Assembly (NCBI GenBank): GCA_002189035.1
Contig: NEEC01000015.1
Location: 868,001 to 932,000 of the forward strand
DNA length: 64,000 bases
Direction of reading: 5' to 3'
Source: Utricularia gibba
Taxonomy: Eukaryota > Plantae > Magnoliophyta
The notes beneath the pieces are model-generated. The model had not been told where the DNA came from. It made no database searches and was given only the letters and a program-made list of their open reading frames with translations. Each line of letters starts with the position of its first letter. The stretch's first letter is position 1. The position numbers were made by a program, and so were the translations under genes. This document shows positions 12,662-45,566 of the stretch, in pieces.

Positions 12662-14502
12662 ATGGATTTGATTTTCGTGGAGAAGGCCCTTTTGGGTCTC
12701 TTCTTCGCCGCTGTAGTCGCCGCCGTCGTGTCCAAGCTCCGTGGTCGGAAACTCAAGCTGCCGCCGGGCCCAATCCCCGTCCCCATATTCGGAAACTGGC
12801 TTCAAGTCGGGGACGATTTGAACCACCGCAACCTCACCGATCTAGCCAAGAAATTTGGCGAAATTTTCCTTCTCCGAATGGGGCAACGCAATCTCGTCGT
12901 CGCCTCTTCCCCAAAACTCGCCAAGGAAGTGCTTCACACCCAGGGAGTTGAATTCGGATCCCGTACCCGAAACGTGGTGTTCGATATCTTCACCGGAGAA
13001 GGCCAGGACATGGTATTCACCGTCTACGGCGACCATTGGCGGAAAATGCGGCGAATCATGACGGTGCCCTTTTTCACCAATAAAGTTGTTCAGCAGTACC
13101 GGGAAGGTTGGGAGTACGAAGTTAACGCTGTGGTGGAAGATGTGAAGAAGAATCCTGAATCTGCAACGAATGGGATCGTCATCAGGCACCGATTGCAGTT
13201 CATGATGTACAACAACTTGTACAGAATCATGTTCAATAGGAGGTTCGAGAGCATGGATGATCCCCTGTTCAAGCAACTTAGGGCTTTGAATGGGGAGAGA
13301 AGTAGATTGGCCCAGAGCTTTGAGTACAACTATGGCGATTTCATTCCCATCTTGAGACCTTTCTTGAAAGGGTACCTCAAGATCTGCCAGGAGCTCAAGG
13401 ACAAGAGACTGAAGCTTTTCAAGGATTACCTCGTAGACGAGAGAAGGTGTGCTGCTCTACCCTGTCCCCATTCTCTACAATTCACTGTCATGTTTACTTA
13501 CATTCCCTGAATCTCAACTGCAGGAAGGTGTATAAAACACAGGAAACCGATAAAAACAGCCTAAAATGCGCCATTGACCACATTCTTGAAGCAGAGGAGA
13601 AGGGCGAGATAAACGAAGCCAATACTCTGTACATCGTTGAGAACATCAATGTTGCAGGTAAATGATTCTGCCTCCATACACATTCGTAGCTCGTCAAATC
13701 TGGGTTAGTGACTTGGTAGGGGCAGAGCAGTACCCCCATTCCTGAATTATGACAACATGTGCACACATTTAAGAAGTAGTTGGCCTGATTCCTACTTCCA
13801 TAAATGCTTCCAGTATTGGTTACAGTGGTGACAGAGTCGTGTCTTTCAGGATATGGTGTGATTGTGTTTACAATTTGGGCTTACGTTGTTATCTGTAATG
13901 CAGCAATAGAAACAACCCTGTGGTCAGTGGAATGGGCACTTGCTGAACTAGTTAACCATCCCGAGGTCCAGGAGAAGCTCCGCCGTGAAATTGATACAGT
14001 TCTGGGGGTAGGAGTCCCCGTGACGGAGCCGGACACCCACAAGCTTCCTTATCTGCAAGCAGTGATCAAGGAAGCGCTTCGTCTCCGAATGCCGATCCCG
14101 CTTCTAGTCCCACATATGAATCTCAATGAAGCCAAGCTTGGAGGGTATGATGTCCCCGCTGAGAGCAAGGTGTTAGTCAACGCCTGGTGGTTGGCCAACA
14201 ACCCCGCCGAGTGGAAGAACCCGGAGGAGTTCAGGCCGGAGCGGTTCCTGGAGGAGGAGTCTAAAGTGGAGGCTAATGGGAATGACTTCAGGTACGTTCC
14301 GTTCGGAGTCGGCCGGAGAAGCTGCCCCGGAATAGTGCTGGCGCTGCCCATCCTCGGGATCACCTTGGGAAGATTGGTTCAGAACTTCGAGTTGTTGCCG
14401 CCGCCGGGGCAGAAGAAGCTGGATACGAGTGAGAAAGGGGGGCAATTCAGTTTGCATATACTCAAGCATTCCACTGTTGTGATGAAACCTAGATCCTTTT
14501 GA
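12662..14502 (+). CDS. C4H: Cinnamate 4-hydroxylase (CYP73A, class I architecture)
   Basis: Three exons: [14 protein letters not shown]...[25 protein letters not shown]; I-helix IVENINVA|AIETTLWS; EALR; PERF; heme motif [10 protein letters not shown]; stop at 14500-14502. Confidence 0.96.
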
Positions 14503-14764
14503 AAGCCCATTCTCCGATGGGCGGAGAAGTTGGTATCCCGCCGGAGTTTCTTCCGTACTTGTGCTTGTACCGTTCAATGGAGTGCTCTAATTTGGTTGCA
14601 TTGGCGGCCTGCGTGTGTGACATGGCATTGGGAAAATATCAAATTCGTAATTTTAAATGCTTAAAATAAAAGTGATAAGTACTAAAAAAAGAAAGTTTAA
14701 TGTGGGGAAAATCAAAAATTGGGGGAAAAAAGGTATAAATGGCTCTGGGCGGCGAGGTAGAACC

Positions 14765-15027
14765 CTAAATCTCATTAGTTTAAGTCTGAGGCTTCGATTC
14801 GGCACGGGGGGCTTGCTTCGGCTTTCTCCGTCCGTCGGAAATCGAAGCCGATGATCACAATCTAGTTGGCGGTGAGGCGGTGAGGATCGTTTAAAGGCAA
14901 TAAATGAGAGGCAGCGAGTGACGCCGCCGCCGGCGCATCTTGGCGTGGCGACTCGTTTCGCAGCCATGGCGGCGGTGGTCGGTGTTCGCTGCTTGTAACG
15001 TGATGTTAAAAGGCGAATCTGAGCCTC
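14765..15027 (+). ncRNA. Box C/D scaRNA-like guide RNA (probable scaR102/snoR102 relative) with U5 and U12 antisense elements
   Basis: TATAAAT at 14734-14740 and telo-box AACCCTAA at 14761-14768. The layout is U12-antisense CTCATTAGTTTAAG (14771-14784) + CTGA (14786-14789); hairpin 14790-14849; C-like ATGATCA (14851-14857); D'-like ATGA (14904-14907); G.U-rich hairpin 14911-14992; C'-like GTGATGT (15000-15006); U5 loop-1 antisense TAAAAGGCGAA (15007-15017) + CTGA (15019-15022). The 5' and 3' ends are estimated. Confidence 0.8.
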
Positions 15028-15095
15028 CGCTGCAAATATCGGTTTTCAGTCGTGCAATTCACATTTCTCGTCATTGATTCAGTGGCGTATGGATC

Positions 15096-15676
15096 TTAAA
15101 CGTTGAATCCATGGAAGCTAAGGAAGTGAATGACCTGGGTAACGAGATCTGGAGTATCGGACTCTCCAGTTGTGTCGATGATTACCCTAGGAATGTCCCC
15201 GAAATCGTAGTCCCAACACCCGGCGTATCCATCGATTAGCTTCTCCATCTCCTTCCATGTCCGAGGTTTATGCCACGGCGCCTCCGCCGCCGCTCTCGCC
15301 TCCACTCGCCGCCGCCATTCTTCGTTGTCCCCCGGCCTGCACTCCACGACTACAACTTTAGCCTTCCTCTGAGCCGTGACCTCCACCAACCGATCGAGAT
15401 GTGCTCGTCTCGAAAGCGGGGAGTCGACCACAACCGTGAGCCCCAAATCGAGCAGGGTCGAGGTCATCCGCCAAACGACGTCGTACGAGAGGTCGTTCAT
15501 CAGCTTGGCCCCGGCCTCTGTTTGCCGGATGGCCTCTTCGACAGGCCTTGTGCAGTCGCGGATATCGTCCTTATCGACTAACGGAGATCCGATGGCGGCG
15601 GCGATGGCCTTGGCCAGCGTACTCTTCCCCGTTCCCGGGTGACCCTTCATCGCTATGATCAATTGGCCTCCCCCAT
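15096..15676 (-). CDS. Intronless small P-loop NTPase (AAA_33-like, kinase-like), uncharacterized
   Basis: IIAMKGHPGTGKSTLAKAIA (Walker A), LVDKDDIRD, VVVDSPLSRRAHL and CRPGDNEEWRRRVEAR. The start is uncertain: ATG 15676 (MGEAK-LIIAMKG) needs one extra base at about 15661, otherwise ATG 15650. Confidence 0.85.
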
Positions 15677-15992
15677 ACCTCCGGCAGCTGCCCAGACCTT
15701 CAATTAGCACACTAAATTACAGCAAATGCCAACACCTAAATATTATATGCATTTTATTAATCATTAAAAAAAGGATAATTTTATGGTATTTTATAAAAGA
15801 TTATATATAAGGGGTAAAACTGTAAAAGTGGGCTCTGAGAACATCGGCGAAGCCCATATGATTTTTTTGAAGAATTTTTGTTACCATGCCCGTGGGATTG
15901 GAGTAACTGATAAACCTCTCCCGGCTCGAGGAAGAAAATCTTTCGTCACTCTCTTCTCTTCTGGATCTTCAATTCTTCCAGCGTTGCGGGCG

Positions 15993-45475: not shown

Positions 45476-45566
45476 TTCATATGCTTGGCTCCGCATAAGC
45501 CATACACTGTGGCGGCCGATTCCTCCGGCCGCCGACGCAAATGGCATACGGGGAGCCAGGCATGTG
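45476..45566 (-). ncRNA. MIR160: MIR160 precursor hairpin (mature UGCCUGGCUCCCCGUAUGCCA at 45562-45542; star GCUUAUGCGGAGCCAAGCAUA at 45500-45480)
   Basis: The mature arm is 20/21 identical to canonical miR160 (UGCCUGGCUCCCUGUAUGCCA). It pairs with the star arm with 3 mismatches, and the upper stem GGCGGCCG/CGGCCGCC is perfect. TATAAA on the minus strand at 45780-45775. Confidence 0.93.

What the first reader, a model, noticed from the sequence alone, without database searches (positions are those of the whole stretch)
14771..14789. D-box guide element predicting 2'-O-methylation of U12 snRNA A8 (minor spliceosome) in a plant scaRNA
Seen: CTCATTAGTTTAAG-T-CTGA near the 5' end of a TATA/telo-box-driven structured RNA. 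Knowledge (recalled): plant U12 begins AUGCCUUAAACUAAUGAGUAAGG, so this element is a perfect 14-bp complement of U12 nt 5-18. It matches the plant CUAAUG rather than the human CUUAUG variant. The D+5 rule places T14781 opposite U12 A8. I recall Am8 being a mapped modification in human U12 without an assigned guide, and I know of no plant guide for any minor-spliceosome snRNA. Inference: this is a conserved, so far unassigned guide for U12-Am8.
Basis: partly seen in the sequence, partly recalled or inferred. Interest (0 to 1): 0.85.

Follow-up and report, generated by a model that had tools for sequence, protein, structure and literature searches.

The report
Candidate U12 methylation guide in scaRNA
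A small plant nuclear RNA of the known snoR102 type starts with a 14-letter stretch that should pair with the minor-spliceosome RNA U12 and direct methylation of its eighth nucleotide, a modification mapped in humans for which no guide has been assigned in any organism.

Summary
CTCATTAGTTTAAG (14771-14784), T14785 and CTGA (14786-14789) lie 31-37 nt downstream of a TATA box.

The locus looks like a snoR102-type doublet scaRNA. Its 166-nt 3' domain is a regular box C/D RNA. The D-box guide of that domain pairs with U5 loop 1 (human Gm37, Arabidopsis Gm40/41). That is the published function and size of Arabidopsis snoR102, whose 5' half is described as of unknown function.

The 5' half here is a compact module: guide, CUGA, a hairpin with a 10-bp closing stem, then AUGAUCA. 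This is K-turn geometry of the D'/C' type. The fifth-nucleotide rule puts T14781 opposite U12 A8.

The complement matches a published human U12 primer at 13 of 14 positions. The plant U12 sequence could not be fetched, so the 14/14 match rests on recall.

Reviews list human U12 Am8 without a guide. Arabidopsis RiboMeth-seq could not read minor snRNAs.

A metagenome scan for the element found the same module in plant-like contigs. It also found the element in front of the D box of canonical C/D snoRNAs in other eukaryotes.

Verdict: a credible, untested U12-Am8 guide and a new member of a known kind. The scan had already noted this RNA's doublet architecture on this same window.

The parts
14734..14740 (+). 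TATA box (TATAAAT), 31-37 nt upstream of the predicted RNA 5' end and guide
   Evidence: RNA-run contigs end at 14765, 14770 and 14784. The plant-like contig L028 has TATAAAAT 33 nt before the same guide.
14761..14769 (+). Telo-box-like AACCCTAAA at the predicted start site
   Evidence: A similar motif lies about 75 nt upstream of the guide in L033, L044 and L046. Its function is inferred only.
14771..14784 (+). Antisense element complementary to U12 snRNA nt 5-18 (T14781 opposite A8)
   Evidence: It is 13/14 complementary to human U12 (primer in PMC4330364) and 14/14 to the recalled plant U12. It is unchanged in the related organism B.
14785..14789 (+). One-nucleotide spacer (T) plus D'-type box CUGA
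   Evidence: There are only two CTGA between 14600 and 15100, and each is preceded by an snRNA-complementary element.
14790..14849 (+). Hairpin directly abutting CUGA (10-bp uninterrupted closing stem); serves as the canonical stem of a K-turn
   Evidence: All four sequencing runs read one extra G after 14805 in its apical part.
14851..14857 (+). C'-like box AUGAUCA, one nucleotide after the hairpin
   Evidence: The plant-like contigs show the same layout, stem-N-RUGAUY: C-AUGAUUC in L033/L044/L046 and C-GUGAUUU in L028.
14868..14878 (+). 5' strand of the terminal stem of the 3' box C/D domain
   Evidence: The fold pairs it with 15023-15033.
14880..14886 (+). C box GUGAGGA (one deviation from RUGAUGA)
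14910..14993 (+). Long G+C-rich apical hairpin between a D'-like UGAG/AUGA (14904-14908) and the C' box
15000..15006 (+). C' box GUGAUGU
15007..15018 (+). Antisense element to U5 snRNA loop 1 (C15014 opposite the G methylated as human Gm37 / Arabidopsis Gm40-41)
   Evidence: Arabidopsis U5 G40 is assigned to SnoR102 (PMC8053127 Table 3). snoR102-2 is 165 nt with a D guide for Gm41/U5 (PMC2685112 Table 2). The U5 loop sequence itself is from recall.
15019..15022 (+). D box CUGA
15023..15033 (+). 3' strand of the terminal stem; the 3' domain 14868-15033 is 166 nt

Best explanation
Positions about 14766-15035 (+) most likely encode an independently transcribed, capped, Cajal-body type doublet guide RNA of the snoR102 kind.

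Its 3' domain is a canonical box C/D RNA. The D-box guide of that domain directs 2'-O-methylation of the conserved G in U5 loop 1.

Its 5' domain is a minimal C/D-like unit. It consists of a cap-proximal 14-nt antisense element, one spacer nucleotide, CUGA, a hairpin and AUGAUCA. CUGA and AUGAUCA, closed by the hairpin, would form a D'/C'-type K-turn that recruits Snu13, Nop56/58 and fibrillarin.

The antisense element pairs with U12 snRNA nt 5-18, so fibrillarin would methylate the nucleotide opposite the fifth position upstream of CUGA, which is U12 A8.

Shown here: the sequence, the box and stem geometry, the match to published human U12, the fit to published snoR102 properties, and the recurrence of the element in other eukaryotes. 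Inferred: transcription start and strand, RNP assembly, the U12 sequence of this species, and the methylation itself.
For: 1. The element, spacer and CUGA are at the stated coordinates, and a chance exact match is negligible.

2. The complement equals human U12 nt 5-18 at 13/14 (primer in PMC4330364).

3. Human U12 carries Nm at positions 8, 18 and 22. Only G22 has a guide, the capped doublet scaRNA17 (PMC7960923).

4. The 3' domain is 166 nt with a C box, C' box, D box and an 11-nt terminal stem, and its D guide pairs with U5 loop 1. Arabidopsis snoR102-2 is 165 nt with a D guide for U5 Gm41. RiboMeth-seq assigns U5 G40 to SnoR102.

5. Arabidopsis snoR102 is a 365-nt capped RNA in Cajal-body-like foci. 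Its 5' half has C/D-like boxes, and it is unknown whether that half guides a modification. The authors liken it to metazoan capped doublets (PMC2875012).

6. CUGA-hairpin-N-RUGAUY geometry: the window has a 10-bp closing stem. Among 2686 CTGA sites in the fetched loci, only 0.4% have a stem of 8 bp or more followed by TGAT.

7. Plant-like metagenome contigs carry the same guide in the same module with unrelated hairpin sequences (L033/L044/L046, 8-bp stem; L028). L028 also has a TATA box 33 nt upstream.

8. Canonical C/D snoRNAs in other eukaryotes carry the same 14-mer one nucleotide before their D box. In a homologous intron of a BIG/Sec7-type gene, L014 and the L010 group share only the boxes, the guide and a covarying terminal stem (CCUC/GAGG versus GAUC/GAUC).

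9. RNA-run contigs reach 14765 and 14770 and so contain the guide.

10. A 96%-identical relative has no change in any guide or box, but seven changes (six substitutions and one insertion) in the 79 nt upstream of the guide.
Against: - The plant U12 sequence, including A at nt 13, and this species' own U12 gene could not be retrieved. The 14/14 match rests on recall.
- No plant U12 methylation map exists; coverage was insufficient in Arabidopsis.
- The 5' domain has no C box upstream of the guide, and its C' box deviates at position 6, so RNP assembly on it is an assumption.
- The RNA contigs are unstranded and continue into the convergent P-loop gene at 15096-15710 (-). Their left ends could be that mRNA's 3' end rather than the scaRNA start.
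- No angiosperm orthologue could be fetched: six neighbour-gene synteny look-ups found no element. Conservation in Arabidopsis snoR102 is therefore untested.
- The metagenome hits were retrieved with the element itself. Their total number (44 loci, many redundant) is about what chance gives for 17 fixed bases, so only their context counts as evidence.
- No Rfam family matches the region.
Confidence: 0.65

Rival explanations
1. The 5' element does pair with U12 but does not guide methylation. It would act as an accessory or chaperone contact, for example tethering U12 or the scaRNP, or helping Cajal-body retention. The degenerate D'/C' unit would serve only for RNA stability.
For: There is no C box upstream of the guide, and the C' box is AUGAUCA rather than UGAUGA. 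The metazoan 5' halves mgU2-25 and mgU12-22 are described as having non-canonical boxes and being unstable on their own (PMC5612246).
Against: The one-nucleotide spacing to CUGA is the register needed for methylation, and it places a known human Nm site (A8) at the fifth position. The same register is kept in front of true D boxes of canonical C/D RNAs elsewhere.
Confidence: 0.12
2. The complementarity is a relic or chance. The 5' half would be only a leader that stabilises the capped precursor of the U5 guide.
For: Kim et al. could not recognise a functional snoRNA in the Arabidopsis 5' half. Angiosperm orthologues could not be checked here.
Against: An exact 14-mer beside CUGA is expected about 2e-6 times per window. 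Even against some 7000 nt of possible rRNA/snRNA targets, the chance for one D'-adjacent 14-mer is about 3e-5 (my arithmetic). The same element in the same module occurs in plant-like contigs with different hairpins. It is unchanged in organism B while the flank varies.
Confidence: 0.1
3. There is no + strand RNA covering 14771-14789. The RNA-seq signal would be the 3' UTR of the convergent P-loop (AAA_33) gene ending near 14765-14784. Any scaRNA would consist only of the 166-nt 3' domain.
For: Contigs from three RNA runs run without a break from 14765-14784 into the P-loop coding region, and contigs carry no strand information.
Against: A TATA box lies 25-31 nt before the contig ends at 14765 and 14770. 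The contigs end without extra A or T letters. The published Arabidopsis RNA is a capped 365-nt doublet. L028 shows the same TATA-to-guide spacing.
Confidence: 0.06
4. The element guides methylation of another RNA that contains CUUAAACUAAUGAG, such as an rRNA, another snRNA or an mRNA, and not U12.
For: The target set of this species could not be searched. The 14-mer also occurs by chance, for example in an archaeal coding sequence.
Against: The match to the published human U12 5' end at 13/14 falls on a region with a mapped Nm exactly at the predicted position. The partner guide in the same RNA targets U5, the snRNA shared by both spliceosomes.
Confidence: 0.05

Closest known systems
Arabidopsis snoR102 (snoR102-1, antisense to At1g68945; snoR102-2, annotated in the 3' UTR of At4g30993)
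   Same: The 3' C/D domain is about 165 nt and its D guide targets the U5 loop-1 G (Gm40/41). A longer form carries a 5' half with C/D-like boxes. The Arabidopsis RNA was cloned from a capped-RNA library and localises to Cajal-body-like foci.
   Different: The whole RNA here is predicted at about 270 nt, against 365 nt in Arabidopsis. No sequence alignment to the Arabidopsis RNA was possible. The literature says it is unknown whether the 5' half guides any modification, whereas here a specific target (U12 A8) is read from it.
Human scaRNA17 (mgU12-22/U4-8) and scaRNA2 (mgU2-25/61), capped doublet box C/D scaRNAs
   Same: These are independent Pol II genes with a 5' cap, a non-canonical C/D-like 5' domain and a canonical 3' C/D domain. 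The 5' domain of scaRNA17 also targets U12, at G22.
   Different: The target positions differ (U12 A8 and U5 G37, against U12 G22 and U4 C8). There is no evidence of common descent. Here the guide sits at the very 5' end, ahead of a lone D'/C' K-turn. The detailed anatomy of the human 5' domains could not be read (paper not held).
Canonical box C/D snoRNAs/scaRNAs with D or D' guides
   Same: An antisense element of 12-14 nt ends one nucleotide before CUGA, the fifth-nucleotide rule applies, and the boxes show K-turn geometry.
   Different: The 5' module lacks the terminal C/D pair and the upstream C box that normally flank a D' guide.

Membership tests
Box C/D 2'-O-methylation guide RNA | C box (RUGAUGA) and D box (CUGA) brought together by a terminal stem | tested here: met
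   Met for the 3' domain: GUGAGGA 14880-86, CUGA 15019-22, and stem 14868-78 pairing with 15023-33.
Box C/D 2'-O-methylation guide RNA | The same terminal C/D pair enclosing the 5' (U12) guide | tested here: not met
   There is no C-box-like motif between the TATA box and the guide. The 5' module has only CUGA 14786-89 and AUGAUCA 14851-57 around a hairpin.
Box C/D 2'-O-methylation guide RNA | K-turn geometry of the internal D'/C' pair (CUGA directly on a stem; a 3-nt bulge N-R-U, then GA, on the other strand) | tested here: met
   This is sequence-level only. The window has CUGA, a 10-bp stem, then G-AU-GAUCA. The same layout is in L033/L044/L046 and L028.
Box C/D 2'-O-methylation guide RNA | Antisense element of at least 10 nt ending 1-2 nt upstream of D/D', with a known Nm at the fifth paired position | tested here: inconclusive
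   The geometry is met for both guides. The U5 G is methylated in Arabidopsis and human. U12 A8 is methylated in human, but plant U12 is unmapped and its sequence was not retrieved.
Box C/D 2'-O-methylation guide RNA | Association with fibrillarin, Nop56, Nop58 and Snu13 | not testable with these tools
   This needs immunoprecipitation.
snoR102 family (plant scaRNA) | A C/D domain of about 165 nt with a D guide for U5 Gm40/41 | tested here: met
   The domain here is 166 nt and C15014 lies opposite the loop-1 G.
snoR102 family (plant scaRNA) | Sequence homology to Arabidopsis snoR102, including its 5' half | not tested
   No Arabidopsis sequence was obtainable: supplements are not held, synteny look-ups were empty, and the ORF-based search was empty.
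snoR102 family (plant scaRNA) | Capped transcript localised to Cajal bodies | not testable with these tools
   Only a TATA box at the right distance and unstranded RNA contig ends are available.
Capped doublet C/D scaRNAs (scaRNA2/17 type) | Independent Pol II gene; 5' non-canonical C/D-like domain plus 3' canonical C/D domain, both aimed at snRNAs | tested here: inconclusive
   The two-domain anatomy and the snRNA-directed guides are met. Independent transcription is inferred from the TATA box and the contig ends.

The most novel reading that the evidence does not exclude
The U12-Am8 guide is ancient and widespread but sits on unrelated backbones. In land plants it is a cap-proximal half-module (guide, D', hairpin, C') at the 5' end of an RNA, fused in this angiosperm to the U5 Gm37 guide. 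In other eukaryotes it is the D guide of canonical intronic C/D snoRNAs. If so, these RNAs point to the guide long missing for human U12 Am8 (and perhaps U5 Gm37). They would also show that a lone D'/C' K-turn next to a cap is enough for guided methylation.
Probability: 0.35. Interest if true: 0.75.

Novelty: new member of a known kind. Interest (0 to 1): 0.62.

Why it matters
U12 nt 5-18 lie immediately 5' of, and run into, the branch-site-binding sequence (from my knowledge of U12). U12 carries three ribose methylations in human, and two of them (Am8 and Gm18) have had no guide since they were mapped. No modification map or guide exists for any plant minor-spliceosome snRNA.

A concrete guide gene gives three things. 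It gives a handle to remove one U12 modification genetically and ask what it does for U12-type intron splicing. It gives a function to the orphan 5' half of a known plant scaRNA. And it gives a search pattern (antisense 14-mer, one nucleotide, CUGA) for the missing guide in other eukaryotes.

It also couples modification of U12 and U5, the two snRNAs that meet in the minor spliceosome, in one transcript.

Tried and rejected
- **Rfam.** The gathering search of the whole window, E-value searches of 14300-15300 and 14762-14796, and a search of 15 related loci gave no family on the RNA.
- **Synteny.** I looked next to homologues of the two neighbouring genes in Spirodela, Asimina, Sesamum (two loci), Erythranthe and Andrographis. 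Neither guide was found.
- **Unbiased retrieval of orthologues by the U5 guide.** The 21-mer C'-guide-D pattern gave no metagenome hit.
- **Protein-style retrieval.** The antisense ORF across the RNA gave no hits.
- **Fetching a U12 gene by DNA pattern.** Genome and viral collections gave nothing, apart from one chance match in an archaeal coding sequence that is not U12 by Rfam.
- **Plant U12 or snoR102 sequences in papers or supplements.** None are held.
- **Metagenome hits rejected as chance.** L003-type gut-bacterial copies, L005, L024, the L013 group and others lack boxes or a hairpin, or are followed by a ribosome-binding site and an ORF.
- **A U4 Am65/67 target for the D' region of the 3' domain.** I considered it and dropped it: only about 8 bp pair, and they are in the wrong register.

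Full report
**Observation.**
The stretch is exactly as described. CTCATTAGTTTAAG is at 14771-14784, T at 14785 and CTGA at 14786-14789 on the + strand. It is the only copy in the window, even with two mismatches allowed. An exact 14-mer is expected 5e-4 times in the window, and 2e-6 times with N-CTGA attached. TATAAAT lies at 14734-14740 and AACCCTAAA at 14761-14769.

**Surroundings.**
Upstream is a cinnamate 4-hydroxylase gene on the + strand, with its stop codon at 14502. Downstream, on the - strand, is a 204-aa AAA_33 P-loop ORF at 15096-15710. The RNA gene fills most of the roughly 600-nt gap between them. The best P-loop matches are only about 60% identical and many are from Lamiales. This suggests a fast-evolving, compact genome of that order, which is an inference only.

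**Anatomy of the RNA.**
Between 14600 and 15100 there are only two CTGA, and each follows an snRNA-complementary element.
- *The 3' domain (14868-15033, 166 nt) is a regular box C/D RNA.* It has an 11-nt terminal stem, a C box GUGAGGA (14880-86), a long G+C-rich apical hairpin (14910-93), a C' box GUGAUGU (15000-06), a 12-nt guide (15007-18) and a D box (15019-22). The guide pairs with UUCGCCUUUUA of U5 loop 1 (U5 sequence from my knowledge). It puts C15014 opposite the G that is Gm37 in human and Gm40/41 in Arabidopsis.
- *The 5' domain is different.* Right after CUGA comes a hairpin (14790-14849) with a 10-bp uninterrupted closing stem. One nucleotide later comes AUGAUCA (14851-57). CUGA directly on a stem, with N-R-U then GA on the other strand, is the layout of an internal D'/C' K-turn. 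There is no C box upstream of the guide.

**What is known about this kind of RNA.**
- RiboMeth-seq assigns Arabidopsis U5 G40 to SnoR102 (PMC8053127).
- snoR102-2 is 165 nt with a D guide for Gm41/U5 (PMC2685112).
- Kim et al. cloned a 365-nt snoR102 from a capped-RNA library and saw it in Cajal-body-like foci. They noted that the 3' half is the C/D RNA and that the 5' half has C/D-like boxes. They wrote that it is unknown whether the 5' half guides modification, and compared it to metazoan capped doublet guide RNAs (PMC2875012).
- The metazoan doublets scaRNA2 and scaRNA17 are independent Pol II genes with caps. Their 5' halves have non-canonical boxes, and the 5' half of scaRNA17 targets U12 G22.
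- The window RNA fits snoR102 in the size and target of the 3' domain and in the two-domain plan. I could not align it to the Arabidopsis sequence.

**The target.**
- Human U12 nt 2-23 appear as a primer in PMC4330364. The complement of the window element equals human nt 5-18 at 13 of 14 positions and differs only at nt 13.
- The fifth nucleotide upstream of CUGA is T14781, opposite A8.
- Human U12 has ribose methylation at positions 8, 18 and 22. Only G22 has an assigned guide, and U5 Gm37 is also listed without one (PMC7960923).
- In Arabidopsis the minor snRNAs had too little coverage for Nm calling.
- No paper in the library uses any obvious name for a U12-A8 guide.
- The genome has a working minor spliceosome according to earlier scan notes: a U12 gene and several U12-type introns (unchecked).

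**Expression.**
- Contigs from three RNA runs cover the locus and end at 14765, 14770 and 14784. That is 25-31 nt after the TATA box for the first two, and they carry no extra letters. So the guide is present in RNA-derived assemblies.
- The contigs are unstranded and continue into the convergent P-loop gene. They may merge two overlapping transcripts, or they may be that gene's 3' UTR. This stays open.
- All four runs read one more G after 14805 than the window does.

**Conservation.**
- *Organism B.* A run of a related organism (about 96% identical) shows seven changes (six substitutions and one insertion) in the 79 nt before the guide, including 14768 and 14769. It shows six substitutions within the 263-nt RNA, and none in any guide or box. 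This is weak but consistent.
- *Neighbour-gene synteny.* Look-ups in six angiosperm loci gave nothing.
- *U5-guide scan.* A metagenome scan with the U5 guide pattern gave nothing.
- *U12-element scan.* The second scan used the U12 element itself (17 fixed bases) and returned 44 loci. That number is roughly what chance allows, and most are plainly chance, including many copies of one gut-bacterial gene. Four groups stand out by context.
  - Group C (L033, L044, L046) is plant-like, with telo-box motifs and a neighbouring C/D-like unit. The guide, T and CUGA are followed at once by an 8-bp-stem hairpin and C-AUGAUUC.
  - Group D (L028) has TATAAAAT 33 nt before the guide, then CUGA, a hairpin and C-GUGAUUU.
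  - The three plant-type hairpins are unrelated in sequence but sit in the same place. Only 0.4% of 2686 background CTGA sites have a stem of 8 bp or more followed by TGAT.
  - Group A (L010, L020, L030, L037, L038 and the distant L014) lies in the intron before a Sec7 exon of a BIG-type ARF-GEF gene. It is a canonical C/D snoRNA with the full 14-mer one nucleotide before the D box. L014 and the others share only the boxes, the guide and a covarying terminal stem (CCUC/GAGG versus GAUC/GAUC).
  - Group B (L006, L018, L027, L042) is another canonical C/D RNA with the guide before its D box.
  - None of these matches an Rfam family.
  - Because retrieval required the element, these hits cannot say how often it is absent. 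They do show that selection keeps this antisense sequence in methylation register in several lineages.

**Mechanism.**
I think the RNA is made by Pol II from the TATA promoter, is capped, and accumulates as a doublet scaRNP. The 3' C/D core gives stability and guides U5 Gm37/40. The 5' D'/C' K-turn binds a second set of core proteins and methylates U12 A8 through the cap-proximal guide.

From my knowledge, other capped C/D RNAs (U3, U8, U13) also use 5'-terminal single-stranded antisense elements, so a guide next to a cap has precedent. The steps from RNP assembly onward are inferred. I put this reading at about 0.65.

The main rivals are:
- pairing with U12 but no methylation (0.12);
- a relic or chance match (0.10);
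- no + strand RNA over the guide (0.06);
- another target RNA (0.05).

**Novelty and score.**
The kind is known: a capped doublet C/D scaRNA, even one aimed at U12. The family (snoR102) is also known. What is new is the target assignment for its orphan 5' half, which would be the first candidate guide for U12 Am8 in any organism and the first plant guide for a minor-spliceosome snRNA. There is also a hint that the same guide exists on other backbones elsewhere in eukaryotes. I rate it a new member of a known kind, with interest 0.62. The scan had already noted the doublet architecture on this same window (s1-277552).

Noticed in passing
L010:2420-2530 (+); also L020, L030, L037, L038 and L014 (guide at 1594-1611, - strand): A canonical box C/D snoRNA sits in the intron just before a Sec7-domain exon of a BIG/ARFGEF-type gene, in eukaryotic contigs from ENA metagenomes. 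The full 14-mer U12-type guide lies one nucleotide before the D box. L014 and the others share only the boxes, the guide and a covarying terminal stem. No Rfam family matches. This could be a U12-Am8 guide outside plants; the organism was not identified.
   Followed up: partly
L027:2843-2860 (-); also L006, L018, L042: This is a second canonical C/D snoRNA: C box GUGAUGA, C' GUGAUUC, and the same 14-mer guide before the D box. It is in contigs that also encode an MCTP-like C2-domain exon. The four copies are near-identical, so only the context supports function.
   Followed up: partly
L033:5227-5244 (-), L044:5033-5050 (+), L046:9273-9290 (+), L028:121-138 (+): Plant-like contigs (telo-box motifs; L028 has a TATA box 33 nt upstream) carry the guide-CUGA-hairpin-RUGAUY module without a U5 guide downstream. 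In L033/L044/L046 the C' box is followed by a second 17-nt element and CUGA, whose target I could not identify.
   Followed up: partly
window 14805: All four sequencing runs, including DNA-derived and related-species data, read one more G in the G run than the window does. This is probably a 1-nt assembly error or polymorphism in the apical part of the 5' hairpin.
   Followed up: no
window 14889-14899: GUUUAAAGGCA, in the D' region of the 3' domain, is complementary to U12 nt 2-11 with one bulged A. It also repeats the AAAGGC core of the U5 guide. It could be accessory pairing, or it could mean nothing.
   Followed up: no
window 14787, 14873, 14881, 14905, 15020: UGAG occurs five times in the 266-nt RNA, against 1.3 expected (about 1% of shuffles reach five). 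Marnef et al. noted many CAB-like ugAG motifs in human capped C/D scaRNAs as a possible Cajal-body signal.
   Followed up: partly
window 14700-14709 (-): TTCCCCACAT on the minus strand resembles the plant snRNA upstream sequence element (recalled consensus RTCCCACATCG). It is inverted relative to the scaRNA and about 25 nt from the TATA box. Its significance is unknown.
   Followed up: no
window 45479-45565 (-): A MIR160 precursor scores above Rfam's gathering threshold (52.7 bits).
   Followed up: no
L030:2510-2572 (+): A weak SNORD52-like C/D snoRNA (27 bits, below threshold) lies in the same host gene as the group A snoRNA. The gene may therefore host several intronic snoRNAs.
   Followed up: no
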